From positions 310,001 to 374,000 of IMG/VR virus record IMGVR_UViG_3300033145_003233: DNA of 64,000 bases. One strand, given 5' to 3'. The position numbers and the translations under genes are program-made. Below, piece by piece: positions 1,945-63,154 of this stretch. The notes below the pieces were generated by a model, which saw only the letters and a program-made list of their open reading frames with translations, had not been told where the DNA came from and did not search any database. Position 1 is the first letter of the stretch; every line of letters begins with the position of its first letter.

Positions 1945-2195
1945 TCATACTCCCCCAGTCCTTCGCAGTTATCAGCCCTAGCAGACATTTTTTCAGCAAT
2001 TGCCATTTGATCCAATTTCTCTTTAGCAGGGCTTTTTTTCATACATACATAACCTATGCTCGACAATGACAGATATCGACATGTTTCATGTTGATGATAT
2101 ATTTTACAGACAGCATCCAGATGTGCCTTAGGAATTTTTCTACTCTCATCCAGTAGATAATCATTCAACTGATTTTGAAAATCTATATAATACAT
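1941..2195 (-). CDS. Small Cys-containing hypothetical protein
   Basis: 84 aa with 4 Cys (CK...CRY...C.K...DNC); coupled to neighbours by overlapping start and stop codons. Confidence 0.65.
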   Translation of the reverse strand: MYYIDFQNQLNDYLLDESRKIPKAHLDAVCKIYHQHETCRYLSLSSIGYVCMKKSPAKEKLDQMAIAEKMSARADNCEGLGEYE

Positions 2196-3019
2196 TATCT
2201 TTTAAAAATCTTTCTATATTGATTTCTATCCATTTTCTTAGGTTTCAACTTCTTTATAACATCTGATAATTTCTCTTTATCCCACAATCTATTATCGCTA
2301 CAATTATGAATGGGCACAGGGCAATTCTCATCTACCCATTTCATAGCCGCTTTGCACATTTTTAAAGTATATGGTTTATGATCTCTATTTTTGCCATAAA
2401 AATCAGTTTTCCTACCCTTACCATATTTGCAATCTGTTCCCAACAGAACTATATCTGAACATCCTAAGGCAACAGCTACCTGAACGGCCAACACCCCAGT
2501 ATTCCCCTTACCATGGAGAACTCCTATATTAGAACCAAATTTAAATTCAGTATCCAATACCCTAAAATTAATAAAAATTCTTCCCGGATCTCCCGTGGAA
2601 CTAGACATCTTTATAGCCTGTTGTCTTATTATATTTTTTTTGTCGCTATTCCAAACCTGCTTATCTTGCCACAACAAAACAGTAGGATCATAAATATAAA
2701 AAATTCTATTTGTGCCTATAGTGAAATATGGATTCAGCAACTTTAAATCTTCTCTAGCTATGCTTGGGGCATTACCTAGTATAAAAGCAACATGACCCTT
2801 TAACAGCCCATTCCACCCTGATAAGGATTTATATCTTATTCTATCCCCTGTTTCCCATTTGCCAAGAATCGATGAAGTAATTTTTAACTTATTTTTCTTC
2901 TTAGGTCTGGTTTTCGTTATTGGGATAATATCTCTTTTCCTGGTTTTTTTTGATTTCTTGCTTTTTCTACCTCTAGGAGATATTTTTAAATCAGATATTT
3001 TTTTCCTATTCGGGTGCAT
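2195..3019 (-). CDS. Maf/MptE-like (GT42/GT29-related) ulosonic-acid transferase with basic N-terminal extension
   Basis: FILGNAPSI...TIGTNRI...ALGCSDIVLLGTD motifs. Confidence 0.7.
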   Translation of the reverse strand: MHPNRKKISDLKISPRGRKSKKSKKTRKRDIIPITKTRPKKKNKLKITSSILGKWETGDRIRYKSLSGWNGLLKGHVAFILGNAPSIAREDLKLLNPYFTIGTNRIFYIYDPTVLLWQDKQVWNSDKKNIIRQQAIKMSSSTGDPGRIFINFRVLDTEFKFGSNIGVLHGKGNTGVLAVQVAVALGCSDIVLLGTDCKYGKGRKTDFYGKNRDHKPYTLKMCKAAMKWVDENCPVPIHNCSDNRLWDKEKLSDVIKKLKPKKMDRNQYRKIFKR

Positions 3020-3028
3020 CTTTTCCTA

Positions 3029-3997
3029 TCATATAATCTTTCTAAAATAATCTATTGTCATATCCATTCCTTCCTCAAGCTTAATATCCGGGAACCAATC
3101 AATTAGTTCAATAGCAAGCTCTATATCAGGATTCCTTCTTTGAGGATCATCTTCTGGCAAACTCCTATAAACTATCTTAGACTTACTATTCGTCATTAGA
3201 ATTATCTTATGAGCTAACTCCAGAATATTTATTTCATGAGGATTACCCAGATTAATAGGGCCAGTTATATCCTTCTTAGATTCCATTAGTTTTATCATTC
3301 CCCATACTGTATCATCCACATAACAAAAACTTCTAGTTTGTTTCCCCTCTCCATATATAGTGATATCCTCGTCCCTTAAAGATTGAACTATAAAATTACT
3401 CACTACTCTTCCATCATTAATAGACATATTAGATCCATATGTATTAAAAATTCTAGCCACTTTAATTTCTAAACCATATTGTCTATGATAATCAAAGAAC
3501 AAAGTCTCCGCACAACGCTTCCCCTCATCGTAACAAGATCTGATACCTATAGGATTAACATTCCCCCAATATGTTTCTATCTGAGGAGAGATAAGTGGAT
3601 CTCCATATATTTCGCTAGTAGATGCTTGTAAAACCTTAGCTCCTGTTTTTCTAGCAGATTCCAGAACATTAATAGTCCCCTGCACATTAGTCTTTATAGT
3701 TTTAACTGGATCATATTGATAATAAAAAGGAGAAGCAGGACAAGCAAGATTATATATCTCATCTGCCTCAATAATAAAAGGATCACATATATCGTGTCTT
3801 ATTATCTCAAAATTATCCAACCGGCATAAATGATCGATATTTCTTTTACTACCTGTAAAAAAATTATCCAGACAAATAACGTCATTTCCCTTTTCTAGCA
3901 AAATTTCGCAGAGGTGAGAACCTATAAACCCACCTCCCCCAGTCACTAAGCTTATTTTATTCATGGCCTTCATCGTCCTGTTTATCTCCCTCTCCAA
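3029..3997 (-). CDS. uxs: UDP-glucuronate decarboxylase (UDP-xylose synthase)
   Basis: [46 protein letters not shown]. True start probably near 3973. Confidence 0.92.
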
Positions 3998-4415
3998 ACA
4001 TACTTATTTTCCAATCCTTGAACTCTTCAGCCAAACAATCTGTTTTCCAGTCTAACCTCTCTTCTGGGCCAATCAAGCTACTAATAAAATTCTGAGATCT
4101 ATTTCTTATACCATTTAAACCATGAGTTAATTTTAAAAGATGTAAATCCTGATCATCTTTTCCCTGTCTAACTTTAGATTCATTATACCAAATATGAGCA
4201 TTTATCTGGGCCAATACTACAACCGCCCTTATTAAATCTCCAGAAATTTTAATGTCTTTTTCTTTTATAATATGATCTAAATCATTAACAATGTGTTTCA
4301 TCTCTTTACCATAAGTCTCTTTACGCTCAGTAATAAAAACTTCTTTTAATTGATGTATAGTTAATCTATCTATTAATTCCGAAAATGTAGGAAGAAATTT
4401 TCTAACCATCTCCAC
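3957..4415 (-). CDS. DUF6165/DUF4254-like helical protein, paralog 1
   Basis: [15 protein letters not shown]...LAQINAHIW...[10 protein letters not shown]; shared with 8059-8502 and 8484-8906. Confidence 0.6.
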
Positions 4416-4434
4416 CCTCCTTATAAATAATTTA

Positions 4435-5388
4435 TTATTTTTTTATTCTTTTATACCATTCTACTGTTTTTCTTATACCTTCTTCTAATGATGTTTGAGG
4501 ATTAAACCCCAACATTTTTATGGCCTTATCAATATTTATTGCTCTCCTGGGAATCATAGTGGGCTTAGATTTATCAAAAACGATATTAGCATTTTCATAT
4601 CCATCTATTTTCAGAATTACATCCAATGTTTTTTTAATAGTATGAGATTCACCAGATGCTAAATTAATAATATCAAAACCATCTACTTTCTCCATGGCCA
4701 GAATTAGTCCATCTACCATATCAGATATATAGGTTATATCTTTAGAATCAAGACCATCGCCCCAAACTCCTATAGGATCATGTCTCTCTACAACTCTTCT
4801 TATCAAAGCTGCTGTAGAATGTGATGTTTCCCATTCATAATCATCATATTCTCCGTACAAATTACCCACTCGTGCAACAATAGTAGTCATAGGATTTTTA
4901 ATTTTGGTAGAGTACATTTCGCACATAACTTCTGAAAACTTTTTCATAGATGCCACGCAAAAATATTTATGAAAAAATTCTCCATTATCATCCTCTTCCT
5001 TAAGGGGAAAATCTACCAATGGATAAACTGTAGTACTACTAACAAATAAAAACTTCTTCACTTTGGCATGATAAGCTGCTTCTAGCATTAAAGTGTTTAT
5101 CAGTACATTAGGAGTGACATGTGCTAATGGATTATATTCCATTACGGCTGCTCCAGACGTATTGGCGGCACACATAAAAACATAATCCTGATTTTTACAA
5201 ATCTTATTACAAAAATTCTTATCTGTCAAATCCCCCCATACAAAAGAAATATTTTCATTTTCGAATTGAGGACCTTTACGATGTAAAGTTGCCTTAACAT
5301 TAGCCCCTAGATCTACTAATCTTTTAATTAAATTTGTTCCTATAAAACCACTTCCACCAGTTACTAGTATCTTCTTACCTTTTAACAT
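4435..5388 (-). CDS. NAD-dependent epimerase/reductase (GDP-fucose-synthase-like extended SDR)
   Basis: TGGSGFIG, NLYGEYD, VWGDG; VASMK where YxxxK is expected. Confidence 0.85.
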   Translation of the reverse strand: MLKGKKILVTGGSGFIGTNLIKRLVDLGANVKATLHRKGPQFENENISFVWGDLTDKNFCNKICKNQDYVFMCAANTSGAAVMEYNPLAHVTPNVLINTLMLEAAYHAKVKKFLFVSSTTVYPLVDFPLKEEDDNGEFFHKYFCVASMKKFSEVMCEMYSTKIKNPMTTIVARVGNLYGEYDDYEWETSHSTAALIRRVVERHDPIGVWGDGLDSKDITYISDMVDGLILAMEKVDGFDIINLASGESHTIKKTLDVILKIDGYENANIVFDKSKPTMIPRRAINIDKAIKMLGFNPQTSLEEGIRKTVEWYKRIKK

Positions 5389-5400
5389 TTTAACTCCTTA

Positions 5401-5931
5401 TTAAGTTATTTCCCCTGTCATGTCTCTTTTAGACAAAATGGGATCAGATATAGGCCACCAAACATTAAAACGAGGATCATCATACTTTACTGTAAATTGA
5501 TTAGCCATACCCTTATAAATACAAGATTGCTTATAAAAGAACATTGCCTCTTCACTCATGACTACATATCCATTCCCATGTTTTGGAGGGATCAAGAGTT
5601 GTTTTTTATTTTCTCCGCTTAATACAAAAGGTTGATACTTTCCAAAATTAGAAGAATCTTTATCATAATTTAAAACATTAACATACATTCTGCCATATAA
5701 ACATGTTACTAATTTCCATGTCCTATCATCACCATGAAAGCCCCTCAAAACATGACGAGAAGACACGGCAATATTATCTTCTAAGAATTCTATTTCTTCA
5801 CCTACAGCTTCTTTTATAGCTTTTGTATAATCTATTTTATTATATAGCTCTTCATAGGTTCCCCTATGATCCTCAAAACTAGAACGATCAAATAAAAAAA
5901 CATTATCCATACTTGTAGTTTGTGCTATCAT
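5401..5931 (-). CDS. RmlC-like NDP-4-keto-6-deoxysugar 3,5-epimerase
   Basis: FEDHRG, VLRGFHGD, LLIPPKHGNG, WPISDPILSKRD. Confidence 0.9.
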   Translation of the reverse strand: MIAQTTSMDNVFLFDRSSFEDHRGTYEELYNKIDYTKAIKEAVGEEIEFLEDNIAVSSRHVLRGFHGDDRTWKLVTCLYGRMYVNVLNYDKDSSNFGKYQPFVLSGENKKQLLIPPKHGNGYVVMSEEAMFFYKQSCIYKGMANQFTVKYDDPRFNVWWPISDPILSKRDMTGEIT

Positions 5932-5933
5932 AT

Positions 5934-6929
5934 TTAAACAACCTCCTCTGCAAAATAATTCTTTCTACTTTTATATTCTTCAGAATTGTCAACAAACCAT
6001 TCCCAAGTTTTTCTCAAGCCTTCCTCTAATGATGTAGATGGTTCATAATGAATCAGTTTTTTAGCAAGAGATATATCCATTACTCTTTTAGGGAAACCTG
6101 AGGGTTTAGTAGTATCAAACTCATAATTAAAGTTTAAAAAACTTTTCAAGGTTTCTACTAATTCTCTAATAGTAACACCTCTCCCACTCCCTAGATTAAC
6201 AAATTTACTATCTGTTCCATAATATAAAGCTTGAATTATTCCTTCTGCGACATCTCTACTGTAAGCAAAATCTCTAATGGCAGAACCGTCGCCCCATATA
6301 ACAACAGGATCTTCCTTGTTATAAATTCTCTGCATAAGAGTAGGAATAACCATAGCGTTCTCAGGATCAAAGTTGTCTCCTGGTCCATAAATATTGGCTG
6401 GCCTAACAATAGCAAAATTCTTCAAACCATATTGAATGTCATAGGCTTCAATTTGTTTTTCTGCCATTCTCTTTGCCCATCCTGGAAACATATCCATAGG
6501 AGGACCATCGAGATTATTATCTTCTTTAAATACCTCTGCGCTTGAATATGCTCCCACAGAGCTAGTGTACACAATCTTTTTCACATTATTATAACGACAA
6601 GCCTCTAACACATTCGTATTCATCATAAGCAATGGAACAAAAAAGCTAGCCGGTTTTTCTTTTGTTACTTTTACAGACCCCTTAATCCCCGCGATATGAA
6701 AGACATAATCAACATCTTTAGTCCATTTCAAACATAAAACATAATCATTCAAATCACCTACTATATGATGAGCGCCTGGAACTCTTATGTTATGATCTAA
6801 AGACACAATAGAAACCTTAGCACCAGCATCTATCAATATCTTAACAACCTGTCGGCCTATTAAACCCGTTCCTCCGGTCACTAAACATTTCTTATCTCTA
6901 AAACTTTCTAAAATATCTTTCTCGATCAT
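5934..6929 (-). CDS. NAD-dependent epimerase/reductase (extended SDR)
   Basis: TGGTGLIG, RPANIYGPGDNF, IWGDGSAIRDF; PGWAK where YxxxK is expected. Confidence 0.85.
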   Translation of the reverse strand: MIEKDILESFRDKKCLVTGGTGLIGRQVVKILIDAGAKVSIVSLDHNIRVPGAHHIVGDLNDYVLCLKWTKDVDYVFHIAGIKGSVKVTKEKPASFFVPLLMMNTNVLEACRYNNVKKIVYTSSVGAYSSAEVFKEDNNLDGPPMDMFPGWAKRMAEKQIEAYDIQYGLKNFAIVRPANIYGPGDNFDPENAMVIPTLMQRIYNKEDPVVIWGDGSAIRDFAYSRDVAEGIIQALYYGTDSKFVNLGSGRGVTIRELVETLKSFLNFNYEFDTTKPSGFPKRVMDISLAKKLIHYEPSTSLEEGLRKTWEWFVDNSEEYKSRKNYFAEEVV

Positions 6930-6941
6930 ATTGATATCCTA

Positions 6942-8069
6942 CTATTTCTTTCTTACATTAACTAGAATCGGCTCTTTCCAATCAAAAGCTATAACCCATG
7001 CCCAATAACGAACTCTGCCCTCTATTAACTCATAGTCATAAAATCCTGTAGGGTCATCAATGGGAGAAACTTTAACTGGATTACATTTTTTATCTTCTTT
7101 TATTCTTTCAGACAACTCAACAGGACTAGGAGCAAATTTCATATCATTAGCTACAGCTTCTTCCACTGTCTTATATACTTTTCTATTACCTCTTCCTCCA
7201 TCATCAACTCTTATTTTTTCTGGATACACATATATTTTTTCTTTCTTAAAGACCCTGCCTATATCAGAAAAATCTTTTTCTGACATATCAAAATCAGAAG
7301 CTCTAGAATTATCTTCAATATGAGAGATATTAGTACTAGCAGGAATAGCCACTACTGAATCATTATGAGTTAACCAATTTAAAATAAGCTGAACAGAAGT
7401 TATGTCGTATTTGTCTATATATTTCTCAAAGATAATTTTTTCTTTATTATTGCCATAAAATTGTCCCTGATCTAAAGGGCTATAAGCTATCAGCGTGATA
7501 TCATTTTTGTCGCAATAAGAAAGAATTTCTTCCTCCACCCCTCTTTCAAAGAGATTATATTCAAGTTGCATAGAAACAATGTCATATTCAAAATTATTAC
7601 GAGCTTTTACAAACTCTTTAAAAGAAAAATTACTAACACCAACATGTTTAATTTTACCTTCCCTAATAAGCTTACCCATAGTCCACATAGTTTCTCCTAT
7701 GGGGATTTTATAATTCGGCCAGTGGATCTGATATAGATCTATACAATCTATACGTAATCTTTTTAAGCTTTCTTCTGCCGATTTTATAACATCATTAGAA
7801 GATAAATGCTCTGGTGACACTTTTGTAGCTATAACTATTTTATCCTTTTTATGTTGTGGAATACTTCCTATAAGTTCTTCAGCATGACCATTACCATAAG
7901 ATTCAGCAGTATCAAAAAAATTAATCCCACAATCTATGGCTTTTTCTATAGCTCTTTTACATTTTTCATCATTAGAAGTATCTGGCTCTAGATAACCGCC
8001 TATCCCCATTGACCCGAAACCAATAGAGGATATATTTATATCAGTATTGCCTAATTTTTTATATTTCAT
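6942..8069 (-). CDS. Aldo/keto reductase with C-terminal ParB/Srx-like domain
   Basis: GINFFDTAESYG, IDLYQIHWP, GVSNF, IAYSPL; tail YELIEGRVRYWAW. Confidence 0.85.
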   Translation of the reverse strand: MKYKKLGNTDINISSIGFGSMGIGGYLEPDTSNDEKCKRAIEKAIDCGINFFDTAESYGNGHAEELIGSIPQHKKDKIVIATKVSPEHLSSNDVIKSAEESLKRLRIDCIDLYQIHWPNYKIPIGETMWTMGKLIREGKIKHVGVSNFSFKEFVKARNNFEYDIVSMQLEYNLFERGVEEEILSYCDKNDITLIAYSPLDQGQFYGNNKEKIIFEKYIDKYDITSVQLILNWLTHNDSVVAIPASTNISHIEDNSRASDFDMSEKDFSDIGRVFKKEKIYVYPEKIRVDDGGRGNRKVYKTVEEAVANDMKFAPSPVELSERIKEDKKCNPVKVSPIDDPTGFYDYELIEGRVRYWAWVIAFDWKEPILVNVRKK

Positions 8070-8502
8070 TTTTTCTCACATTATTAATAATATCTAAATA
8101 CCATGCATCAGGAGATATAAATGTGGCCTTTGCCCCAGGAGTAGTAAGCTCCCCAACGCTACCCGAAATCATATTCTTGATAGAATTTTTTATACCATTA
8201 TTAAATTCCTGAGATAATATAAGCTTATCCGTATAGATATCATGATTATCTTCTAATTCCATTTCGTCCTTCAGGGACCATATATGCAGATTAGCTTGTG
8301 ACATCAAAATTATCTGTCTTATTAGCTTGGGTGTTAATTTTATATCTTTCTCATCTAACACGTAATCTATATCATGCGCTAACTTTTTTATTTCTCCCGA
8401 CCAATCAGCAGATAATAACATTTCTTTTATCTGACAAATAGATAACTTATCTATTAACTCAGCAAAAGTAAAATTAACTTTTTTTACAAGCTTATCGTCC
8501 AT
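8059..8502 (-). CDS. DUF6165/DUF4254-like helical protein, paralog 2
   Basis: FAELIDKLSICQIKE...MSQANLHIW. Confidence 0.6.
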   Translation of the reverse strand: MDDKLVKKVNFTFAELIDKLSICQIKEMLLSADWSGEIKKLAHDIDYVLDEKDIKLTPKLIRQIILMSQANLHIWSLKDEMELEDNHDIYTDKLILSQEFNNGIKNSIKNMISGSVGELTTPGAKATFISPDAWYLDIINNVRKNEI

Positions 8503-8906
8503 CCTTCTAACCCATCCACATTAATATTTGTTTTAATATCAACTGTATTCGACTCATCTACTTCCTGCATAATAATATTTTTAATTCTATTTCTAATACC
8601 ATTTAACTGATGAGACAATATGAGATGCTTCCCATAATCTTCACCAGAGCTTTTTTTCATTTTCTCTTTCTCTTTCCATATATAAAGATTAATTTGAGAC
8701 AAAATAATAATTAACCTAATAAATGTTGATGATGGTTTAATATCTCTCTTTTCTAAATCTACATTTATATCATGCATTAGATAACCAATCTCTTTTTCAA
8801 AATCATCTATCTCTGCAATATTATCAACCTCTTTAATTTGCTGTATAGACAAATTATCAATCAAATCTGAAAAAGACAAATGACATTCTCTTCTACCCAC
8901 TAACAC
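8484..8906 (-). CDS. DUF6165/DUF4254-like helical protein, paralog 3
   Basis: FSDLIDNLSIQQIKE...LSQINLYIW...LSHQLNGIRN. Confidence 0.6.
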   Translation of the reverse strand: MLVGRRECHLSFSDLIDNLSIQQIKEVDNIAEIDDFEKEIGYLMHDINVDLEKRDIKPSSTFIRLIIILSQINLYIWKEKEKMKKSSGEDYGKHLILSHQLNGIRNRIKNIIMQEVDESNTVDIKTNINVDGLEGWTISL

Positions 8907-10636: not shown

Positions 10637-10637
10637 T

Positions 10638-14358: not shown

Positions 14359-14360
14359 AA

Positions 14361-50811: not shown

Positions 50812-50815
50812 AATA

Positions 50816-51906: not shown

Positions 51907-51907
51907 A

Positions 51908-54125: not shown

Positions 54126-54143
54126 CTTCCTTCCCCCTTTCTT

Positions 54144-55151: not shown

Positions 55152-55154
55152 GTA

Positions 55155-56253: not shown

Positions 56254-56994
56254 CTATCTCAAAAATTCGACTCCAGATAAATCTGTTTTCCTCTTCTCTA
56301 TTAAAGATAAAACTTTTCTTTGTAATTGTTTATTAATCTTTAATTTTTCCTTAGATCTATGCATTTGCCTTTTATGCCTACGATACATACTAACATATTT
56401 ATCGACATATCCGATTTTAAATCTATGATTGAATACTCTTGCCCACATTTCCCTATCGCTTTTGCTTCTTAAAGATTCATCATACAAACCTATCTTCCGA
56501 TGAATATCTTTTTTAAGCATAACGCTTTGAGCGTGTACTAGTTTATAACATGAAGCATCTTTTTTGCCATTTAGCCATTTCTGCCAAAGCCTCGATTCTT
56601 TTGTTTTAATACTATCCTCTCTAACACTAAAATCAAGAACTGGGCCATGAACAAAATCAAAACCTTGTTTAATCTTCTCATATCTTAGGGCTATACCATT
56701 TTCTGTAGTCATATCATCAGCGTCCAACATCACTAAAATATCAGCACTAGCCATATTTATACCGACATTCTTAGCATGAGAATAGCCACAGTTTTTACGA
56801 AGTTTAATATATTTAACTCTATCTGATATGTATTTTTTTATATTTGGATAAGGATTATCAATAGAATTATCATCAACTATAATCATCTCTGAATTTTTAA
56901 AATTTTGCTTGAGGAAAGATTCAATACAATCAACGATATAGTCTCTGTAATTATACAATGTTGTTATAACTGAAATTTCATACGTAATACCCAT
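56254..56994 (-). CDS. GT2 glycosyltransferase
   Basis: VDDNS, AKNVG, LDADD, GLYDE, DREMWAR. Confidence 0.9.
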   Translation of the reverse strand: MGITYEISVITTLYNYRDYIVDCIESFLKQNFKNSEMIIVDDNSIDNPYPNIKKYISDRVKYIKLRKNCGYSHAKNVGINMASADILVMLDADDMTTENGIALRYEKIKQGFDFVHGPVLDFSVREDSIKTKESRLWQKWLNGKKDASCYKLVHAQSVMLKKDIHRKIGLYDESLRSKSDREMWARVFNHRFKIGYVDKYVSMYRRHKRQMHRSKEKLKINKQLQRKVLSLIEKRKTDLSGVEFLR

Positions 56995-56995
56995 T

Positions 56996-57934
56996 CTATA
57001 TTTCGCTTCTCAACACGCTAACATATTTTTTAACCACATATTTAATATCTAAATCAGAACGATCTGATCGTTTCCCATTATCTTTGCTAATAAGTTTATG
57101 AATACCCTTAGCTACTATACTTGGATTAATATTGTCCTTACATCTAATGGTTAAAGGATGAAAATCCCACTTATCAATATCTAAAATAACACCATCATCT
57201 TTCACAATTTCCCTAGTCCCGCCTAGATTAGTATATAATATCCTCAAACCACATGATAGCCCTTCTATAATAGAGTTAGGGCATGAATCTATTTGTGTCA
57301 AATGTATTTGATACGAACATGCTTTAAAAACAGATATAACTCTCTCGAAAGTACATTCCCCTAGGAAATGTATTCTTTTATTTTCTTTATATCGTTCTAT
57401 TTTATTATCAACCTTAGAATGACCACCTATTATATATAAATGATTCTTAACAGATGCTTTTAAAAAACCCTTGATCATAGAAAAAGGTCTTTTGTTCTTC
57501 CTCCATATAGCGCATGCCACAAACGAGCCAGGAGGAATTTCCTTATCTGGTTGTATATTCTTAATACTATCTAAATCAATTCCATTATGAATAACGGTAT
57601 CGGGCTTTTTGATATTCATGACTCCCTTACACATTTTTCTAGAGAAATCAGATTGATAAATTACATATTTAGATTTATTAATAGAATTTTTATATACCTC
57701 ATTCATCTTTTCATGATCCCCACCATGATAACATCCATCCACCCTTATAATAATAGGTTTATTATGAGATACCTGATGGCGCAAAAAACACAACTCTCCA
57801 TCAAATTCTTTTGTTGGATCATGTACTATTTCTATATCTTCATCAGCAGCATATTTGAGAAAAGCATCAACTAATCTCTGACGAAAAATTTTAGGACCAC
57901 CGCTAAACTTTTTCATAATTACTAATATTTTCAT
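56996..57934 (-). CDS. GT4 glycosyltransferase
   Basis: RVDG, YQS.FS, IHNG, DSCPNSIIEGL; paralog of 51908-52819. Confidence 0.85.
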   Translation of the reverse strand: MKILVIMKKFSGGPKIFRQRLVDAFLKYAADEDIEIVHDPTKEFDGELCFLRHQVSHNKPIIIRVDGCYHGGDHEKMNEVYKNSINKSKYVIYQSDFSRKMCKGVMNIKKPDTVIHNGIDLDSIKNIQPDKEIPPGSFVACAIWRKNKRPFSMIKGFLKASVKNHLYIIGGHSKVDNKIERYKENKRIHFLGECTFERVISVFKACSYQIHLTQIDSCPNSIIEGLSCGLRILYTNLGGTREIVKDDGVILDIDKWDFHPLTIRCKDNINPSIVAKGIHKLISKDNGKRSDRSDLDIKYVVKKYVSVLRSEI

Positions 57935-58596
57935 TGATCTTCCTTAACTATCTGTTCCCAGATACTCTTACTAAATTCAGATTTACCCTTGACCAAACAA
58001 CATGAACGTAATTTTTTCTTATTAAATGGATGAAAATATGCACTATCATTGTTTTCACTTAAAAATTCATCAACTACTTTTTTAATCCCGTACCATTTTT
58101 TATCCCCATAATCGTGAAAGAATACAACTCCACCCTCAGTCATTAAGGGCCAAAAAGAATCAAATGAAATTTGAGCAGGTTCATATAAATCTGTATCTAT
58201 ATGAAGCATCATAATAGACAACTCTTTATTTTCTTCCACAAAAAGAGGAACTGTTTTTAAAATATCTCCTCTAATCATGGTACATAAATGTATAACCCCA
58301 TTTTTAGTCAAGCTCTCTAAACAATCATCATAAGTGTCAGAAGCATTTTCAATCCTCTCTTTAAATTTCTCTGGATTTGTGAAAGGAGTAAGATCTATTT
58401 TAGAAAAATGAGGAAAGCCATGCCACGTATCAAACAAATAACCTTTAATATACAAACTAGTAGCCATAATGACCGAAGCCGTTCCCTGTTTCACTCCACA
58501 CTCCACAAAACTAACATCTTCTCTATTTCCCACATATTTAAAAAGTATTTGAGAGATTCTCTTTATAAAAAGACGATGCCACTGTTTTTTTGTCAT
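57931..58596 (-). CDS. TylF/MycF-family O-methyltransferase
   Basis: VECGV, FDTWHGF, LHIDTDLYE, FHDY. Confidence 0.88.
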   Translation of the reverse strand: MTKKQWHRLFIKRISQILFKYVGNREDVSFVECGVKQGTASVIMATSLYIKGYLFDTWHGFPHFSKIDLTPFTNPEKFKERIENASDTYDDCLESLTKNGVIHLCTMIRGDILKTVPLFVEENKELSIMMLHIDTDLYEPAQISFDSFWPLMTEGGVVFFHDYGDKKWYGIKKVVDEFLSENNDSAYFHPFNKKKLRSCCLVKGKSEFSKSIWEQIVKEDQ

Positions 58597-59354
58597 ATCT
58601 CACCTTCTATTATTGGATAAGGTTTTAAATTGTATTTTTCTCTTCTCACAATAGCTTCTTGAACCAATCTCTTCCATGTTACCTTAGTGCTCTCTTTAGA
58701 CACTATGCTTCTTTTAACGCCTTGTCTATACCTATAGCAAATTCTATTAATAAACATACCATTTCCAAGTTCTTCTAATCTATATCCCATATATTTATCA
58801 ACAGCGCACCTTAATCCTTTAGGCAACAAGTGTTTTAAATCATTACAACGCCGAGAAAAAGTTCTCCAATGAGAATAAACATGTTTTCTTCTCTCCCCAG
58901 AATCCAGCATAGACCCCCACTTAGTAGGCATTCTACAAAAACCCACCTTTATATCTTTCATATTAACATTGCAAATCTTGAATTGAGTATAGATCCACGC
59001 TATATCTTTGTATTTATTATATTTTCTCATGATATATTCTACAGCATCATTTACTAACATATCGTCAGCATCTAATACCCCCATAAAATCTCCAGTTGCA
59101 TTATTAATTGCCACCCTATAAGAACTACTACAATGCATCCTTTTCTTATTTGTTATATGTTTAAATGAAATATCTGAATCATTAAATTTGCCCATTAATT
59201 TTTGTATGATGTTATTAGTATTATCTCCCGAGCGGTCATCTACAAATACAACCTCTAGAGGCCTATATTCCTGCTTCAAAATAGATTGGCCCCATTCATG
59301 CAAATATTTTTCCTTATTAAAACTAGATGTTACAATAGTAAATTTAGATTCCAA
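58593..59354 (-). CDS. GT2 glycosyltransferase
   Basis: VDDRSGD, LDADD; duplicate of the C-terminal domain of 59355-61244. Confidence 0.9.
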   Translation of the reverse strand: MESKFTIVTSSFNKEKYLHEWGQSILKQEYRPLEVVFVDDRSGDNTNNIIQKLMGKFNDSDISFKHITNKKRMHCSSSYRVAINNATGDFMGVLDADDMLVNDAVEYIMRKYNKYKDIAWIYTQFKICNVNMKDIKVGFCRMPTKWGSMLDSGERRKHVYSHWRTFSRRCNDLKHLLPKGLRCAVDKYMGYRLEELGNGMFINRICYRYRQGVKRSIVSKESTKVTWKRLVQEAIVRREKYNLKPYPIIEGEI

Positions 59355-61244
59355 TTAAAAATCCTTGCATATATCAATCTTAAATGGAGATAAACTATAT
59401 CTCTTCCTTCTATGTGTAGCTTCATCCATAATGCTATGCCAAACTTTTATTGCTTCTTTAGTAGATGACACTGAATTAGGAGACCCTACTGGATGTTGAC
59501 GATACTTATAACACACTCTATTCACGAACATGCCAGGTCCAAATTCTTCTAATCTATACCCCATAAATTTATCAACCCCGCATTTTAATTTTCTATTAAA
59601 TAATTTACGAGGTTTTTCTATTTTATAATTAAATGTTCTCCAGTGACCAAAACCATGAACTCTTTTTTTACCGATATCGAGTAAACAATCTGACCCAGAC
59701 GGAGCAGAACAAAATCCTTTTCTTTTCTTATTCATCTTCATATCACATATTTGAAATTGGGTATATATCCATGCAACATCAGGATACTTATTATATAATT
59801 TCATTATAAATTCCACCGAATCATCTACCAAAGCATCATCAGCATCCACCACCCCAAAAAAAGAACCAGTAGCCGAATTAAACAAATTATGATATGATGC
59901 TCCACAATATAATCGTTGTGGACTTTTAACTAATTTAAATTCTATATCATTTTTAGAAAAATCTTCTTGCATTGTCTTTATTAATTGAGAAGTGCCATCA
60001 TTGGAACAATCATCAGCAAATACCACTTCTAGAGGTCTATATTTTTGTTTAAGAATAGAATGATGCCAATCCATTAAATAAGGAACCTTATTAAAACTTG
60101 ATGTCAAAATGCTAAATTTATCATTATCTCTTTTCGTTTTTACGCTTGCTATGGATGGTTTCTCATCTATTATCTTCACTGGAGCATAATCATCTTTAAT
60201 GCCGCATAATTTATTAATGACACTAATATAGCCTCTAGCCATATATTTAGCATCCAGCTGTTCTTTAAAATATTCTTTCGTACTTATCTTAAGCCTCTCC
60301 AACTTATCAGGATTTTTTATTAAATTAGATAATATCTTTTTGGCTCTTTTTCTATCACTAAAAATATATCCATTAACTCCATGTTTTATGATTTCTTTAT
60401 TGCCATAATTATCGCTACAAACAACAGGAATACCACACGCCATAGCTTCCAAGATTGCCATACTAATACCTTCATCCCTGTTTGTCTCATAAAGAAAAAT
60501 GTCCCAATCTTTCATCATAGCAACTTTTGTTTTAAAATCATTAACTCCTCCCAACATTTGTACTTCATTTTTTCCCCGCTTAGTCATATTCCTAGAACGT
60601 CTATGCCCAGATACTTTATCTCCTATATAATGATGAATCAACCGGCATGGTAAATCAACCTCCGCACACCATTTCAGCCATCCGTCAGAATGCTTCCAGC
60701 TACATACCCTATTGATCCTACCAGTAAGCAAAGCTCCCTTCTTATTCATCCCCCTTGGAGTTATAGGCTCATATCTTTCTTGATTCACCCCATTGTAGAT
60801 AAAACAATGTTTAAGATGAGGATACCATTTACCAAGTTGACGATTCATATTATCGCTTACACCTATCATCAAATCTAATTCCCTCAATCTACCCCATGAA
60901 GTTGTTTTAAATAAAGTATGGTTTATAGCTATAACCTTAGCTTTAGTCCCTTTTTTTATTTGCCTTACAAGATTAACACTAGAATTGGCTAGTTTATGAT
61001 ATAATACAACAGCATTTTTATATTCAGCTATTGTATTTACTATCTTTCTTTCATCTTTCATCCTAACACACGGAACGGCAGAGGTAGAAACAAATAAACT
61101 ATTATAATATCTCTCCGTAGTATAAATAACTATTTGTTTGTGTTCAGGATGGTATTTTTTAATGGCATAATAAAGCTCAAACAACATACTCTGTGCTCCT
61201 CCCACCCCCATGTTGTCAATAATATGAAAAATACAAAAAGACAT
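59355..61244 (-). CDS. Bifunctional GT4-GT2 glycosyltransferase
   Basis: GGAQ, YNGV, EGISMAILEAMACG; then DDCSNDGT, VDADD. Confidence 0.9.
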   Translation of the reverse strand: MSFCIFHIIDNMGVGGAQSMLFELYYAIKKYHPEHKQIVIYTTERYYNSLFVSTSAVPCVRMKDERKIVNTIAEYKNAVVLYHKLANSSVNLVRQIKKGTKAKVIAINHTLFKTTSWGRLRELDLMIGVSDNMNRQLGKWYPHLKHCFIYNGVNQERYEPITPRGMNKKGALLTGRINRVCSWKHSDGWLKWCAEVDLPCRLIHHYIGDKVSGHRRSRNMTKRGKNEVQMLGGVNDFKTKVAMMKDWDIFLYETNRDEGISMAILEAMACGIPVVCSDNYGNKEIIKHGVNGYIFSDRKRAKKILSNLIKNPDKLERLKISTKEYFKEQLDAKYMARGYISVINKLCGIKDDYAPVKIIDEKPSIASVKTKRDNDKFSILTSSFNKVPYLMDWHHSILKQKYRPLEVVFADDCSNDGTSQLIKTMQEDFSKNDIEFKLVKSPQRLYCGASYHNLFNSATGSFFGVVDADDALVDDSVEFIMKLYNKYPDVAWIYTQFQICDMKMNKKRKGFCSAPSGSDCLLDIGKKRVHGFGHWRTFNYKIEKPRKLFNRKLKCGVDKFMGYRLEEFGPGMFVNRVCYKYRQHPVGSPNSVSSTKEAIKVWHSIMDEATHRRKRYSLSPFKIDICKDF

Positions 61245-61867
61245 TATGCTGCTCCATAAATAATTTTATTACCTTTTATTATATTATCTTTCGCCCACAA
61301 TGGCTGAAGATTATTTAAAGACCAACAATATTTAAATTCTACGTCATCAGTGCTTTTATATTTAAAAAATGATTTAGGGATGATATGATCAATATGCCAT
61401 TCTATTGAATTATTCCAAGACATCCCTGGCTGAAATAATTTTTCTAAATGTTCTTTTAAATCCTGAAGAGTATAACCAACAAGGAATTCCCAATGTCTAC
61501 CATTTTTAGATATGCCATTAAAATTAAGAGAATTTCTAATCCCTTTAGATATGTTCTCATTTAATCTAATTATAGGATCTTTCCTTCTCTTTGCCCAATA
61601 TTTTCTATACCATTTTGACCTACAATCTGCAATCTCTGGTCTAGATTGATATTTTCTTTTTTGAGCCATTATTTGATCTTTGTTATCTATAGCATATTTT
61701 TTTTGTTGTTCTTTAACTTTTTCTTTATTTTTTTCATAATATTCTTTCCTTTGTTCTTTAATTTTTTCTTTATTTTCTATATAATATTTCTTTCTTCTTC
61801 TCTTTATCTTTTCTTTATTTTTTTCATAATAATCTTTTTTATATTGCCTTACTTCATCTGTTCTCAT
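61244..61867 (-). CDS. HNH/EndoVII-like free-standing endonuclease with N-terminal YYEKNKEKI-type repeats
   Basis: GMSWNN..EWHIDHIIP...NLQPLW..DN..K. Confidence 0.85.
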   Translation of the reverse strand: MRTDEVRQYKKDYYEKNKEKIKRRRKKYYIENKEKIKEQRKEYYEKNKEKVKEQQKKYAIDNKDQIMAQKRKYQSRPEIADCRSKWYRKYWAKRRKDPIIRLNENISKGIRNSLNFNGISKNGRHWEFLVGYTLQDLKEHLEKLFQPGMSWNNSIEWHIDHIIPKSFFKYKSTDDVEFKYCWSLNNLQPLWAKDNIIKGNKIIYGAA

Positions 61868-62009
61868 TTTTATCCCCTCTATTCTTCTGATCTAAATATT
61901 GATCTAAGACTTGTCTTATCAAAGAAGAAGCAGATGTTTGAATTCTTTTAGCTTCTTTCTTAAAAAACCGTTTTTGTCTTTTTGTAAAATAAATTTGAGT
62001 TCTTATCAT
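61854..62009 (-). CDS. Ribbon-helix-helix (CopG-like) DNA-binding protein, 51 aa
   Basis: Not in ORF track. MIRTQIYFTKRQKRFFKKEAKRIQTSASSLIRQVLDQYLDQKNRGDKNENR*; AGGTG RBS; stop overlaps the HNH start. Confidence 0.75.
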   Translation of the reverse strand: MIRTQIYFTKRQKRFFKKEAKRIQTSASSLIRQVLDQYLDQKNRGDKNENR

Positions 62010-62021
62010 TTTAACACCTAT

Positions 62022-62043
62022 ATACATATATCATACATATATC
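62022..62043. repeat. Perfect 11-bp tandem direct repeat (candidate RHH operator)
   Basis: ATACATATATC twice, directly upstream of the RHH gene RBS. Confidence 0.55.
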
Positions 62044-62134
62044 ATATATTTCCAAGTATGCGCAAAAAACTCCTTTATTTCATTAAAAGAATAAAGCAAG
62101 AAATGATTAAAATTTCACTATTTAGAAGAATATT

Positions 62135-63154
62135 TTATCTATTGCTCAAATATTGTTGTTCAATCCAAACATATGTCTTCTCCATCCCCTCTTCTAAAGA
62201 AATTGATGGTTCCCAATTCAAGACTTGTCTAATAAAATTATTATCACTATTCCTACCCCTAACCCCCTCTGGAGCATTCAGGTCATAAATTTTCTCAACC
62301 TTAATATTAGCAATATCCTCAACAAGTGATACCAATCTATTAATAGAAACAAGTTGACTAGAACCAAGATTAATAGGAGTAGCTATTAATTTGTCACAAT
62401 GCATAATCATATCAATACCATTTAGACAATCTTCTATATATGTGAAAGTGCGTGTTTGTAACCCATCTCCCCATATAACTATTTTATGATTACTTGTAGC
62501 TTTAGCATCTATAACCTTGCGACAAATAGCAGCTGGAGCTTTTTCTCTTCCTCCTTTCCACGTTTCGAAAGGTCCATAAATATTATGAAAACGAGCAACA
62601 AAAGTTTTCATCTTGCGCTCGACCCAATATTCTTTACAAAACATTTCCGATATTAACTTTTCCCAGCCATAACCTCGTTCTGCCATCGCTGGATACGCAT
62701 CAGATTCTTTTAATGCAGTACTATCAGAATCACCTTGTAAAGAAATATTGTAAGCACATGCTGATGAAGAAAAAAAATAACGATTGACTCCGGCCTTGTA
62801 TGCCGCTTCAATCATATGTGTATTAATTAAAATGCTTCGAAGACAATCAACCCTGAATTTCTGAATAAAACCTATCCCCCCCATATCAGCAGCTAGATTA
62901 TATACTTCTACCGCTCCCTCACATACCCTAGCACAATTGTCCTTCTCTGTTAAATCTAGGCATAAAGATTCAACACCCTCTACTCTCTGATGCCATTCAG
63001 AAAGCGGTTTTTTATCCACAGCACGAATTCTAAAAAAACCTAGATTGCTGAAATACTTAACTAAAGAGCCTCCGATAAATCCACCCGCTCCGGTAATGAC
63101 AATCAAATCTTCCTTATCAAGCACATCAATAGCTTGCTTGTTTTCCCCCACCAT
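62135..63154 (-). CDS. GDP-mannose 3',5'-epimerase
   Basis: TGAGGFIG, NLAADMGG.GFI, SSACAY, YGWEKL, GGREKAPAAICRK, PEGVRGRNSDN. Confidence 0.88.
   Translation of the reverse strand: MVGENKQAIDVLDKEDLIVITGAGGFIGGSLVKYFSNLGFFRIRAVDKKPLSEWHQRVEGVESLCLDLTEKDNCARVCEGAVEVYNLAADMGGIGFIQKFRVDCLRSILINTHMIEAAYKAGVNRYFFSSSACAYNISLQGDSDSTALKESDAYPAMAERGYGWEKLISEMFCKEYWVERKMKTFVARFHNIYGPFETWKGGREKAPAAICRKVIDAKATSNHKIVIWGDGLQTRTFTYIEDCLNGIDMIMHCDKLIATPINLGSSQLVSINRLVSLVEDIANIKVEKIYDLNAPEGVRGRNSDNNFIRQVLNWEPSISLEEGMEKTYVWIEQQYLSNR

What the first reader, a model, noticed from the sequence alone, without database searches (positions are those of the whole stretch)
2195..63154. A ~61-kb, apparently all-soluble glycosylation supercluster with no export machinery, probably on a huge viral genome
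Seen: about 70 consecutive, mostly translationally coupled genes, including roughly 24 glycosyltransferase-like genes, 17 methyltransferases, 2 sulfotransferases and many NDP/CMP-sugar enzymes. None shows an evident transmembrane segment, and there is no Wzx, Wzy, Wzm/Wzt, Wzz or polyprenyl-phosphate initiating transferase. Known: cellular O-antigen, capsule and S-layer loci usually include or need such membrane components, whereas flagellin glycosylation islands and giant-virus capsid/fibril glycosylation are cytoplasmic. Inference: with two free-standing homing endonucleases, an intein fragment and a phage-type nucleotidyltransferase nearby, this looks like an autonomous system for coating virion proteins (or another cytoplasmic target) with complex methylated, sulfated, acidic glycans.
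Basis: partly seen in the sequence, partly recalled or inferred. Interest (0 to 1): 0.88.

Follow-up and report, generated by a model that had tools for sequence, protein, structure and literature searches.

The report
Huge-phage 61-kb soluble glycan factory
A 548-kb bacteriophage devotes 61 kb (78 tightly packed genes) to making unusual acidic, methylated and sulfated sugars and joining them without any membrane protein. This is the largest virus-encoded glycosylation cluster I could find described, but what it decorates is still unknown.

Summary
Window 2195-63154 carries 78 genes, 76 on the minus strand, 98.6% coding, with 58 of 77 junctions overlapping or at most 10 nt apart. I could verify 13 GT2/GT4 genes (9 firm, 4 weak), 4 sialyltransferase-fold (MptE-like) genes, 13-14 methyltransferases and 2 sulfotransferases. 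I also verified 3 CMP-ulosonic-acid modules, a 6-deoxyhexose module and two thiamine-diphosphate C2-transfer enzyme pairs. Twenty genes have no family; the one I modelled has a GT-B (NeuC-like) fold. No gene has a convincing transmembrane segment. No priming transferase, flippase, polymerase or ABC exporter lies in the window or in 9.5 kb below and 31.7 kb above it.

The window is bases 300001-364000 of a 547,943-bp IMG/VR contig. That contig also carries a terminase, a sigma-70 factor and a peptide deformylase, so it is a huge phage of a bacterium. A 387-kb relative keeps the same supercluster (at least 52 kb) with gene gain and loss.

The target is not shown. My best guess is cytoplasmic glycosylation of phage (virion) proteins (about 0.45). 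The main rival is rebuilding of host envelope glycolipid through host export (about 0.3).

The parts
485..1393 (-). Flank: RlaP-type nucleotidyltransferase, a conserved core neighbour and not a sugar gene
   Evidence: PF10127. tblastn finds relatives in 635 phage records. 63-74% identical in related huge contigs.
1483..2195 (-). Flank: two small conserved proteins (153 aa with a Lys/Arg-rich N-terminal 65 residues; 84 aa)
   Evidence: No Pfam hit. Conserved next to the anchor gene in 6 related loci. Sequences read.
2195..3019 (-). Sialyltransferase-fold (MptE-like/DUF115) protein with a disordered basic N-tail. It is the conserved low-end anchor of the cluster, and its membership in the pathway is uncertain.
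   Evidence: PF01973 E 3e-5, below the gathering score. AlphaFold pLDDT 87; best Foldseek hits are CstII, the Maf glycosyltransferase 5mu5, human sialyltransferases and also archaeal HPPK. 100 homologues, 50 IMG/VR loci.
3029..9912 (-). 6-deoxyhexose module. It holds a LegB/RmlB-like dehydratase (3029), three GDP-fucose-synthase-like epimerase/reductases (4435, 5934, 8893), an RmlC-like epimerase (5401), an aldo-keto reductase (6942) and three small paralogues of unknown function (3957, 8059, 8484).
   Evidence: Pfam and NCBIfam hits, all below equivalog cut-offs. Paralogy. Partly conserved, 63-82% identity, in relatives L010, L013 and L015.
9881..11597 (-). Weak class-I methyltransferase (9881-10636) and a 319-aa gene with no family (10638-11597)
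   Evidence: Methyltransf_24 E 9e-4; nothing for the second gene.
11584..16187 (-). Two thiamine-diphosphate enzyme pairs. One is a split transketolase-like pair (12533 N-part, 11584 C-part). The other is a pyruvate-dehydrogenase-E1-like beta (13312) and alpha (14361), the alpha fused to a GT2-like N-domain. The inferred role is transfer of two-carbon branches onto keto-sugars.
   Evidence: E1 beta 313 bits against a cut-off of 321. The N-domain is homologous to 41560-42417. The role is inferred from antibiotic branched-sugar pathways (my own knowledge).
16193..19248 (-). FkbM-type methyltransferase (16193), Gmd-like 4,6-dehydratase (16890), an unknown protein with a basic tail (17907) and a methyltransferase (18589)
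   Evidence: (gmd 191 bits, below cut-off).
19249..23806 (-). Ulosonic-acid module C. It holds a HAD phosphatase, an HpaI/GarL-type pyruvate aldolase, a D-2-hydroxyacid dehydrogenase, a KdsB-like CMP-Kdo synthetase, a sialyltransferase-fold transferase (22380) and a sulfotransferase (23060).
   Evidence: The KdsB-like gene is above the NCBIfam cut-offs NF003952 and TIGR00466. PF01973 E 2e-5 and Sulfotransfer_2 at 32.7 bits against 22.
23797..28036 (-). Tailoring block: methyltransferases 23797 and 25028, a GT2 (26478), an FkbM piece (27366) plus a possible split N-piece (27737), and unknowns 24471 and 25663
28038..32140 (-). Two GT4 transferases (28717, 30131), a methyltransferase (31006), a paralogous unknown pair (29640, 31604) and unknown 28038
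32133..32873 (-). Sialyltransferase-fold (MptE-like) transferase
   Evidence: PF01973 E 4e-6, below the gathering score.
32851..33660 (-). Free-standing MerR-HTH/GIY-YIG/NUMOD3 homing endonuclease, a selfish insert
33799..33836 (-). Terminator-like 17-bp hairpin followed by a T run, in the only large gap (213 nt)
   Evidence: This is a consensus match only.
33874..38977 (-). Nonulosonic-acid module B. It holds a GT2 (33874), a NeuB-like synthase (34520), an unknown (35323), methyltransferases (36021, 36645), a PseF-like CMP-transferase (37297) and a D-2-hydroxyacid dehydrogenase (38003).
   Evidence: 44-75% identical and syntenic in relative L096.
39026..40553 (+). The only two plus-strand genes: an unknown 304-aa protein and a Methyltransf_24. 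The inversion is conserved in the relative.
40550..42977 (-). Two weak GT2-like genes (40550, 41560) and a methyltransferase (42438)
   Evidence: GT2 E 1e-3 and 8e-3. 78% and 68% identical in L096.
42968..44122 (-). GT-B-fold protein closest to UDP-GlcNAc 2-epimerases, including NeuC. It probably feeds a NeuB-like synthase, but it could instead be a GT-B transferase.
   Evidence: No Pfam, PHROG or NCBIfam hit. AlphaFold pLDDT 94; Foldseek E 1e-11, TM about 0.6. 77% identical in the 387-kb relative.
44138..48007 (-). Unknowns 44138, 45697, 46400 and 47369, plus a sialyltransferase-fold candidate (45003)
   Evidence: PF01973 E 0.015, weak. No PHROG hit for 44138 and 46400, the only two scanned. 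Three are conserved in L096.
48000..51427 (-). Nonulosonic-acid module A: a NeuB-SAF-cupin fusion (48000), a sulfotransferase (49473), a divergent CMP-transferase (50113) and a methyltransferase (50816)
51427..56244 (-). A GT4 (51908), weak GT1-like (54144) and weak GT2-like (55155) genes, a cupin (55888), and unknowns 51427, 52819 and 53628
   Evidence: All are 52-63% identical and syntenic in L096.
56254..61244 (-). Transferase block: GT2 (56254), GT4 (56996), a TylF-like O-methyltransferase (57931), GT2 (58593) and a GT4-GT2 fusion of 629 aa (59355)
61244..62027 (-). A possible HNH endonuclease (weak) and a 57-aa possible ribbon-helix-helix protein
   Evidence: E 0.016-0.048.
62135..63154 (-). 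High-end boundary gene: a GDP-fucose-synthase-like short-chain dehydrogenase
63176..63910 (-). Flank: an ORF that starts with the C-terminal splicing block of an intein; the extein is unidentified
   Evidence: PF14890 E 5e-9, residues 3-42.

Best explanation
The region is a phage-encoded, membrane-independent glycan assembly line.

Shown:
- It lies on a 548-kb tailed-phage genome of a bacterium.
- It encodes three routes to CMP-activated 3-deoxy-2-ulosonic acids. Two are NeuB-like routes; one is a pyruvate-aldolase route with a KdsB-like activator.
- It encodes a 6-deoxyhexose route with two thiamine-dependent C2-transfer enzyme pairs.
- It encodes at least 13 GT2/GT4 transferases, four sialyltransferase-fold proteins, two sulfotransferases and 13-14 methyltransferases.
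- All are soluble, and nearly all are co-oriented and tightly packed.

Inferred:
- Host NDP-hexoses, PEP/pyruvate, CTP, SAM and PAPS are converted into rare sugars.
- Soluble transferases add these sugars one at a time to an acceptor in the cytoplasm during infection. The glycans are then methylated and sulfated.
- The acceptor is most likely one or more phage proteins that end up on the virion surface. This parallels giant-virus fibril glycosylation, mycobacteriophage capsid/tail glycosylation and Maf-type flagellin glycosylation.
- Gene turnover between relatives would diversify the coat.
For: Viral genome:
- IMG/VR membership.
- Terminase, sigma-70 factor, RNR and HNH genes on the same contig.
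- Peptide deformylase, inteins and Apyc1 nearby.

Enzyme content.

Sialyltransferase fold of 2195-3019. A GT29 Pfam hit on a neighbouring paralogue in L045. PHROG 4603 'sialyltransferase' for the paralogue in L037. Three of the four fold-mates sit within 5 kb of a CMP-transferase gene; one is directly adjacent.

No membrane proteins. No priming or export families among the hits in the window and 41 kb of flanks.

Selection: 50-78% identity and synteny over 21 kb in a 387-kb relative, with the same 40-kb spacing to the anchor. Sugar genes next to the anchor vary between relatives.

Precedents:
- Tupanvirus cluster, 49 kb and 33 genes, with clade-specific content between conserved flanks (PMC10117803).
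- Mycobacteriophage virion glycans (cited in PMC12619734).
- Maf enzymes put Kdo and Neu5Ac on Ser/Thr (10.1101/2020.06.03.131540).
Against: - No acceptor was identified, and no structural gene is adjacent.
- The four MptE-like proteins are 226-274 aa. They lack the flanking domains of about 600-aa Maf enzymes, and all score below the Pfam gathering score.
- The same fold is used by an archaeal pterin pyrophosphokinase.
- The closest paralogues of 2195-3019 in other phages sit in a Macro-HNH-DHH-AAA-RNR context without sialic-acid genes. That anchor may therefore not be a glycan enzyme at all.
- Lipooligosaccharide-type pathways also need no dedicated membrane genes.
- Only about 126 kb of the 548 kb was seen.
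- Transmembrane prediction was a simple hydropathy scan.
Confidence: 0.45

Rival explanations
1. Host-surface remodelling. The phage builds a new oligosaccharide on a host lipid acceptor at the inner face of the membrane, either lipid A-core as in lipooligosaccharide or a host-primed undecaprenyl carrier. Host MsbA/Lpt, Wzx or ABC systems then export it. This would change the infected cell's surface, for example to exclude other phages or grazers.
For: - Lipooligosaccharide loci are made only of soluble transferases plus neuBCA/cst-type genes (my own knowledge).
- The authors of P-SSM2 proposed this for its 24 'LPS' genes (PMC1079782).
- Huge-phage surveys class glycosyltransferases as host-manipulation or envelope genes.
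- A distant cellular homologue in Marinicaulis sits with the same enzyme mix: sulfotransferase, GT2, methyltransferase, CMP-transferase and 2-hydroxyacid dehydrogenase.
- The window has no NDP-hexose nucleotidyltransferase, so it depends on the host anyway.
Against: - No heptosyl- or Kdo-transferase family (GT9/GT30) and no GT8/GT25 core transferases among the Pfam hits.
- I found no experimental case of a lytic phage rebuilding host LPS with soluble enzymes. Virion glycosylation by virus-encoded clusters has been shown experimentally.
- 11% of the genome is a high price for a transient surface change.
Confidence: 0.3
2. The products are not attached to protein or envelope lipid. They could be soluble or secreted glycans, a glycosylated small molecule, or a matrix around the infected cell.
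For: - The thiamine-dependent C2 branching enzymes, many methyltransferases and deoxysugar genes resemble antibiotic sugar-tailoring sets (my own knowledge).
- An acyl-carrier protein and a radical-SAM gene lie about 30 kb above the window.
Against: No polyketide, non-ribosomal peptide or terpene scaffold genes were seen. There is no exporter. At least 13 transferases imply a long glycan rather than decoration of an aglycone.
Confidence: 0.1
3. DNA hypermodification. Some of the sugars are attached to modified bases of the phage genome.
For: - 2195-3019 and its neighbour 1483-1944 carry Lys/Arg-rich tails.
- Paralogues sit beside RNR, HNH and Macro genes.
- A relative has a T4-gp1-like dNMP kinase 9 kb away.
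- Phage DNA glycans are known (reference listed in PMC12619734).
Against: No hydroxymethylase or known DNA glycosyltransferase was seen. A 61-kb pathway with sulfation and acidic nine-carbon sugars is far beyond any known DNA modification and would hinder packaging.
Confidence: 0.05
4. The contig is cellular (an Asgard archaeon, as NCBI labels assembly GCA_054384775.1) or chimeric, and the cluster is an ordinary surface-polysaccharide locus.
For: Identical fragments sit in a bin named Candidatus Asgardarchaeia.
Against: - Terminase, bacterial sigma-70 factor, peptide deformylase, homing endonucleases and Apyc1 are present.
- The flanks are dominated by genes with no family, and no ribosomal or tRNA genes appear in the window or the flanks examined.
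- GC and skew are uniform.
- The same synteny occurs on 387- and 394-kb contigs from other samples.
Confidence: 0.02

Closest known systems
Glycosylation gene clusters of giant viruses (Megavirinae; largest reported is Tupanvirus, 49 kb and up to 33 genes; PMC10117803, PMC9614988)
   Same: Both are virus-encoded. Both combine bacterial-type rare-sugar pathways, many transferases and sulfotransferases. Content is lineage-specific between conserved flanking genes, and no membrane step is required.
   Different: The host here is a bacterium and the virus a tailed phage. The cluster is larger (61 kb, 78 genes). It is rich in CMP-ulosonic-acid modules and methyltransferases. Attachment to virions is shown for giant viruses but not here.
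Flagellin glycosylation islands with Maf (DUF115) nonulosonic-acid transferases
   Same: Both are cytoplasmic and independent of a lipid carrier. Both have NeuB-type synthases, CMP-transferases and DUF115-fold transferases side by side, with methyl and other tailoring. Content is hypervariable.
   Different: The phage proteins are only the catalytic core (226-274 aa against about 600 aa). There is no flagellin. There are many more GT2/GT4 genes, plus sulfation.
'LPS' gene clusters of T4-like cyanophage P-SSM2 (24 genes in two clusters; PMC1079782)
   Same: A lytic marine phage carries sugar epimerases, transferases and synthases without export genes, and the function has not been tested.
   Different: This cluster has three times as many genes in one block, and it includes ulosonic-acid, sulfation and C2-branching chemistry.
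Mycobacteriophage virion glycosylation (Freeman et al. 2023, as cited in PMC12619734)
   Same: Phage-encoded soluble transferases modify capsid and tail-tube proteins in the cytoplasm.
   Different: Those phages have a few transferases and no sugar biosynthesis (transferase number and position from my own knowledge and an abstract). Here it is a complete sugar factory far from the known packaging gene.
Campylobacter/Neisseria-type lipooligosaccharide loci (neuBCA plus cst sialyltransferases)
   Same: Both consist only of soluble transferases plus sialic-acid synthesis, with GT42-like fold enzymes.
   Different: Those loci are chromosomal and flanked by waa heptosyltransferases, with lipid A-core as acceptor. 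None of these features is seen here.

Membership tests
Huge tailed phage (Caudoviricetes, at least 200 kb) | Terminase large subunit on the same molecule | tested here: met
   L037:17783-19681, phrog_2 E 3.5e-24. tblastn hits annotated terminases and a 485-kb uncultured phage.
Huge tailed phage (Caudoviricetes, at least 200 kb) | Genome above 200 kb, classed as viral, lacking cellular core genes | tested here: inconclusive
   The contig is 547,943 bp and is in IMG/VR. Only about 126 kb was inspected. No capsid gene was identified and completeness is unknown.
Virus-encoded autonomous glycosylation cluster (giant-virus type) | Sugar-nucleotide synthesis and transferases clustered on the viral genome | tested here: met
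Virus-encoded autonomous glycosylation cluster (giant-virus type) | Lineage-specific content between conserved flanks | tested here: met
   The anchor and core flank are conserved while adjacent sugar genes differ. The middle of the cluster is syntenic with gene gain and loss.
Virus-encoded autonomous glycosylation cluster (giant-virus type) | Glycans found on virion proteins | not testable with these tools
   This needs particles and glycoproteomics.
Maf flagellin nonulosonic-acid glycosyltransferase | Central DUF115/MptE-like sialyltransferase-fold domain | tested here: inconclusive
   PF01973 E 3e-5 to 0.015, all below the gathering score. Foldseek finds Maf 5mu5 (E 1e-5), but the pterin kinase 8sd5 scores similarly.
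Maf flagellin nonulosonic-acid glycosyltransferase | Full-length architecture with N- and C-terminal acceptor-binding domains (about 600 aa) | tested here: not met
   The window proteins are 226-274 aa. The 632-residue 5mu5 is covered only at TMt 0.25.
Maf flagellin nonulosonic-acid glycosyltransferase | Flagellin as acceptor | not tested
   No flagellin family appears among the hits in the window or flanks. The rest of the contig was not seen.
Wzx/Wzy- or ABC-transporter-dependent O-antigen/capsule locus | Polyprenyl-phosphate priming transferase (WecA/WbaP type) | tested here: not met
   No such Pfam family and no polytopic ORF.
Wzx/Wzy- or ABC-transporter-dependent O-antigen/capsule locus | Flippase plus polymerase, or Wzm/Wzt, and a chain-length regulator | tested here: not met
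   None in contig 290.5-395.7 kb. No ORF in the window or the scanned flanks has two or more hydrophobic segments; contig 387.6-395.7 kb was checked by Pfam families only.
Lipooligosaccharide-type core-extension locus | Only soluble transferases plus sialic-acid genes | tested here: met
   Same evidence as above. This feature is shared and so does not discriminate.
Lipooligosaccharide-type core-extension locus | Heptosyl- or Kdo-transferases (GT9/GT30) and waa context | tested here: not met
   No such hits. Twenty genes remain unassigned.
NeuB/NeuA sialic-acid pathway | NeuB-family synthase and CMP-transferase meeting equivalog scores | tested here: not met
   NeuB-like genes score 160-167 bits against cut-offs of 340-400. 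The PseF-like gene scores 113 against 206. Only the KdsB-like 21612-22376 passes its cut-offs. These are divergent enzymes and the products are probably not the standard sugars.

The most novel reading that the evidence does not exclude
A lineage of marine huge phages carries the largest known viral glycosylation system. It uses the system, with no membrane step, to coat its own particles with lineage-variable glycans rich in sulfated, methylated ulosonic acids and branched deoxysugars. That would be a phage counterpart of giant-virus fibrils, built with short sialyltransferase-fold enzymes that act directly on proteins.
Probability: 0.4. Interest if true: 0.85.

Novelty: new variant of a known kind. 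Interest (0 to 1): 0.72.

Why it matters
Virus-encoded glycosylation is established for giant eukaryotic viruses. For phages it is known only as a handful of transferases. This is a 78-gene sugar factory, 11% of a phage genome, conserved yet shuffled among relatives. That implies strong selection on a glycan phenotype in uncultured marine phages.

The cluster offers a large set of soluble, divergent enzymes for glyco-engineering. These include ulosonic-acid synthases and activators, short sialyltransferase-fold transferases, carbohydrate sulfotransferases and thiamine-dependent sugar-branching enzymes.

It also poses a testable question: do huge phages wear their own glycan coat, or do they re-dress their host? 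The main huge-phage surveys I could read do not describe such clusters.

Tried and rejected
- Sequence search of 2195-3019 against PDB, alone and as a profile, gave only chance or marginal hits. The fold search was needed.
- GenBank phages hold no relative of that protein.
- PHROGs gave nothing useful for the seven unassigned cluster genes scanned (one chance-level hit, E 0.007); the hits it gave were to flank proteins.
- I tried to locate the high-end boundary in relatives using the 353-aa neighbour and the peptide deformylase. Only the contig itself came back.
- I hoped peptide deformylase homologues would name a host. They are lineage-specific and below 50% identity to cellular ones. The one close named hit is an 'Atribacterota' bin, probably also misbinned. 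The host remains unknown beyond 'bacterium'.
- The topoisomerase search in the phage collection was uninformative.
- There is no Rfam family and no tRNA in the window. Promoter-like sites are not above shuffled expectation.
- An Asgard-archaeal origin was rejected (see rivals).
- Stop-codon recoding was rejected. All three stops are used and ORFs tile cleanly.
- Literature searches by sample or accession number found nothing.

Full report
**Where the window comes from**

Exact protein look-ups place the window at bases 300001-364000 of JGI metagenome contig 3300033145|Ga0366840_1000004, which is 547,943 bp long. The same contig is IMG/VR entry UViG_3300033145_003233.

A second stretch of the contig (about 32.7-53.3 kb, locus L037) came up because it holds a paralogue of a window gene. 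It carries these genes:
- a terminase large subunit (phrog_2, E 3.5e-24);
- a sigma-70 family factor;
- a ribonucleotide reductase;
- a nicotinate phosphoribosyltransferase;
- a Macro domain protein;
- two HNH endonucleases.

The terminase aligns with annotated terminases of cultured phages. Its best match is a 485-kb uncultured phage, at only 26% identity.

The window flanks hold a peptide deformylase, intein pieces, an Apyc1 anti-defence gene, a UvrD helicase, a type IA topoisomerase, and many small genes with no family. Start codons are preceded by a moderate purine-rich signal, and all three stop codons are used. GC is 0.28-0.36 and GC skew is about -0.3 in nearly every 2-kb bin (weakest at the two inverted genes).

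This is a huge tailed phage of a bacterium, and the host is not identified. NCBI assembly GCA_054384775.1 holds identical 7-12-kb fragments and is labelled Candidatus Asgardarchaeia. Given the bacterial-type and phage genes, I read that label as misbinning.

**The observation**

From 2195 to 63154 there are 78 genes. Of these, 76 are on the minus strand and the region is 98.6% coding. Forty junctions overlap and 18 more have gaps of at most 10 nt. The only sizeable gap (213 nt) holds a terminator-like hairpin just before a free-standing GIY-YIG/NUMOD3 endonuclease.

The content, from precomputed and fresh Pfam/NCBIfam scans, is as follows.

1. A deoxyhexose module (3029-9912, 16890, 62135).
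   - It has two 4,6-dehydratase-like and four GDP-fucose-synthase-like short-chain dehydrogenases, an RmlC-like epimerase and an aldo-keto reductase.
   - All score below equivalog cut-offs.
2. Two thiamine-diphosphate enzyme pairs (11584-16187).
   - One is a split transketolase-like pair.
   - The other is a pyruvate-dehydrogenase-E1-like pair whose alpha subunit is fused to a GT2-like domain.
   - By analogy with branched antibiotic sugars (my own knowledge), I infer transfer of two-carbon branches.
3. Three CMP-ulosonic-acid modules.
   - Module C (19249-23806) has a HAD phosphatase, an HpaI/GarL-type pyruvate aldolase, a 2-hydroxyacid dehydrogenase, a KdsB-like activator that passes its NCBIfam cut-offs, a sialyltransferase-fold protein and a sulfotransferase.
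   - Module B (33874-38977) has a NeuB-like synthase, a PseF-like activator, a 2-hydroxyacid dehydrogenase and methyltransferases.
   - Module A (48000-51427) has a NeuB-SAF-cupin fusion, a sulfotransferase, a very divergent activator and a methyltransferase.
4. Nine firm and four weak GT2/GT4 genes.
5. Thirteen to fourteen methyltransferases.
6. Four MptE-like (ex-DUF115) genes at 2195, 22380, 32133 and 45003.
7. Twenty genes without any family, several in small paralogous groups.

However, one orphan (42968-44122) modelled confidently (pLDDT 94) as a GT-B fold. It is closest to UDP-GlcNAc 2-epimerases, including NeuC, so more transferase-like genes may be hidden among the orphans.

**Membrane and export components**

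A 19-residue Kyte-Doolittle scan gives seven real genes with a single peak of 1.6-2.1. Each peak lies inside a soluble enzyme domain or family. The highest peak, in 2195-3019, is a buried helix-strand with pLDDT above 95 in the model.

No ORF in the window has two hydrophobic segments. The same holds for contig flanks 290.5-300 kb and 364-387.6 kb. No WecA/WbaP, Wzx, Wzy, Wzz or ABC-2 family appears among the hits from 290.5 to 395.7 kb. About 420 kb of the contig remains unseen.

**The sialyltransferase-fold proteins**

Sequence searches of 2195-3019 against PDB failed. An alignment-based model (pLDDT 87) was then searched by fold. It matched:
- Campylobacter CstII (E 4e-6);
- the Magnetospirillum Maf glycosyltransferase (E 1e-5);
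- Pasteurella and human sialyltransferases;
- nearly as well, the archaeal pterin pyrophosphokinase MptE.

The first 65 residues of the model are disordered and Lys/Arg-rich.

A paralogue in L037 hits PHROG 4603, annotated as a sialyltransferase. A neighbouring paralogue in another phage passes the GT29 Pfam model. Three of the four window members sit within 5 kb of a CMP-transferase gene (one directly adjacent), which fits CMP-sugar transferases.

They are short catalytic cores, not full-length Maf enzymes. The case for 2195-3019 itself is the weakest:
- It is the conserved anchor at the cluster edge (55-63% identical in relatives).
- Its closest paralogues in some 40 IMG/VR contigs lie in a recurring Macro-HNH-MptE-like(x2-3)-DHH-AAA-RNR arrangement without NeuB or CMP-transferase genes.
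- It may use a host donor such as CMP-Kdo, or it may do something unrelated to glycans.

**Relatives**

Contigs of 394 and 387 kb from other samples share this gene order: anchor, 84-aa gene, 153-aa gene, RlaP, topoisomerase. The sugar genes next to the anchor differ and include LicD, B12/radical-SAM enzymes, APS kinase and a UDP-GlcNAc 2-epimerase.

In the 387-kb contig, a 77%-identical copy of 42968-44122 lies 40 kb from the anchor, as it does in the window. The surrounding 21 kb is syntenic with window 34.5-56.2 kb at 50-78% identity, including the two inverted genes. Six window genes are absent there and others are added. The supercluster (at least 52 kb there) is thus a conserved, evolving trait of a phage lineage.

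Above the window, at contig 375-388 kb, there is a further NeuB, a HAD-type hydrolase, a CMP-transferase and another MptE-like gene.

In cellular genomes the anchor family is rare and distant, at 27-35% identity, mostly in marine Alphaproteobacteria. One such locus, in Marinicaulis, combines the same enzyme types. No flagellin or export gene was among the ten largest ORFs scanned there.

**Mechanism**

Shown: a complete set of soluble enzymes for making CMP-ulosonic acids and modified deoxyhexoses, joining them, and methylating and sulfating the products, all on a phage genome.

Inferred: host NDP-hexoses (the window has no nucleotidyltransferase), PEP/pyruvate, CTP, SAM and PAPS feed the pathways. 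Relatives carry an APS kinase, but this window does not. Sugars are added stepwise to an acceptor in the cytoplasm.

The acceptor is unknown. I favour phage proteins destined for the virion (about 0.45). The reason is that the experimentally resolved cases of virus-encoded sugar clusters all decorate particles: giant viruses (PMC10117803, PMC8456856) and mycobacteriophages (cited in PMC12619734). In addition, Maf-type enzymes are known to place Kdo and sialic acids directly on Ser/Thr (10.1101/2020.06.03.131540).

The main rival (about 0.3) is remodelling of host lipid-linked glycans exported by host systems, as proposed for cyanophage P-SSM2 (PMC1079782). Lipooligosaccharide-type assembly needs no dedicated membrane genes, so their absence here does not decide the matter. 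Free glycans or glycosides (about 0.1), DNA modification (about 0.05) and a cellular origin (about 0.02) are less likely.

**Novelty**

The largest giant-virus cluster I found described is Tupanvirus, at 49 kb and up to 33 genes. P-SSM2 has 24 genes. The huge-phage surveys I could search mention glycosyltransferases only as a common class.

This is a new, much larger and chemically richer variant of a known kind. Its function is not yet demonstrated.

Noticed in passing
window 2195-3019 and loci L002, L004, L007: NCBI assembly GCA_054384775.1, labelled Candidatus Asgardarchaeia, contains 7-12-kb contigs with proteins identical to this phage's. Close homologues also sit in bins named Pacearchaeota and Atribacterota. 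These are probably phage contigs misbinned into low-GC MAGs.
   Followed up: partly
L037:8899-13177; L019:8780-12520; L027:9285-13186; L045:9242-11490: A recurring phage module appears in dozens of IMG/VR contigs of 17-500 kb, without sialic-acid synthesis genes. Its order is Macro domain, HNH, two or three tandem MptE-like/GT29-like genes, DHH phosphoesterase, AAA ATPase, ribonucleotide reductase. Its role is unknown; nucleotide metabolism or anti-defence are possibilities.
   Followed up: partly
L098:6338-17212 (contig about 378.4-389.3 kb, above the window): A satellite sugar module (NeuB, HAD-type hydrolase, CMP-transferase, MptE-like) is interleaved with an Apyc1 anti-Pycsar gene, NADAR, endonuclease VII and a cREC_REC protein. 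An acyl-carrier protein, CYTH, a UvrD helicase and a radical-SAM gene lie further up.
   Followed up: no
window 63176-63910; L006:940-1512 and 2910-3971: Intein pieces are scattered. One ORF begins with the C-terminal splicing block. A 190-aa Hint-like ORF with a weak helicase PHROG hit lies 2.5 kb away, separated by a 353-aa ORF and three opposite-strand ORFs. This may be a disrupted or split intein-bearing helicase gene.
   Followed up: partly
window 1483-1944, 2195-3019, 17907-18623: Three proteins carry extremely Lys/Arg-rich tails (20-28 K/R in 40 residues). In 2195-3019 the tail is predicted to be disordered. It could bind nucleic acid or act as a packaging signal.
   Followed up: no
window 27366-28036: A 99-aa ORF with a weak methyltransferase N-terminal match overlaps by 34 nt a 134-aa FkbM-type ORF. 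This looks like one methyltransferase split by a frameshift.
   Followed up: no
window 1-64000: GC skew is very strong, about -0.3 in nearly every 2-kb bin (about -0.15 at the two inverted genes), with nearly all genes on one strand across at least 100 kb of the contig.
   Followed up: no
L074:1747-6480 (Marinicaulis chromosome): A 1577-aa soluble fusion protein (GT2, MptE-like, GT4, FkbM methyltransferase) lies next to a sulfotransferase, a CMP-transferase and a 2-hydroxyacid dehydrogenase. It is a cellular counterpart of the phage enzyme mix, and its glycan is unknown.
   Followed up: no
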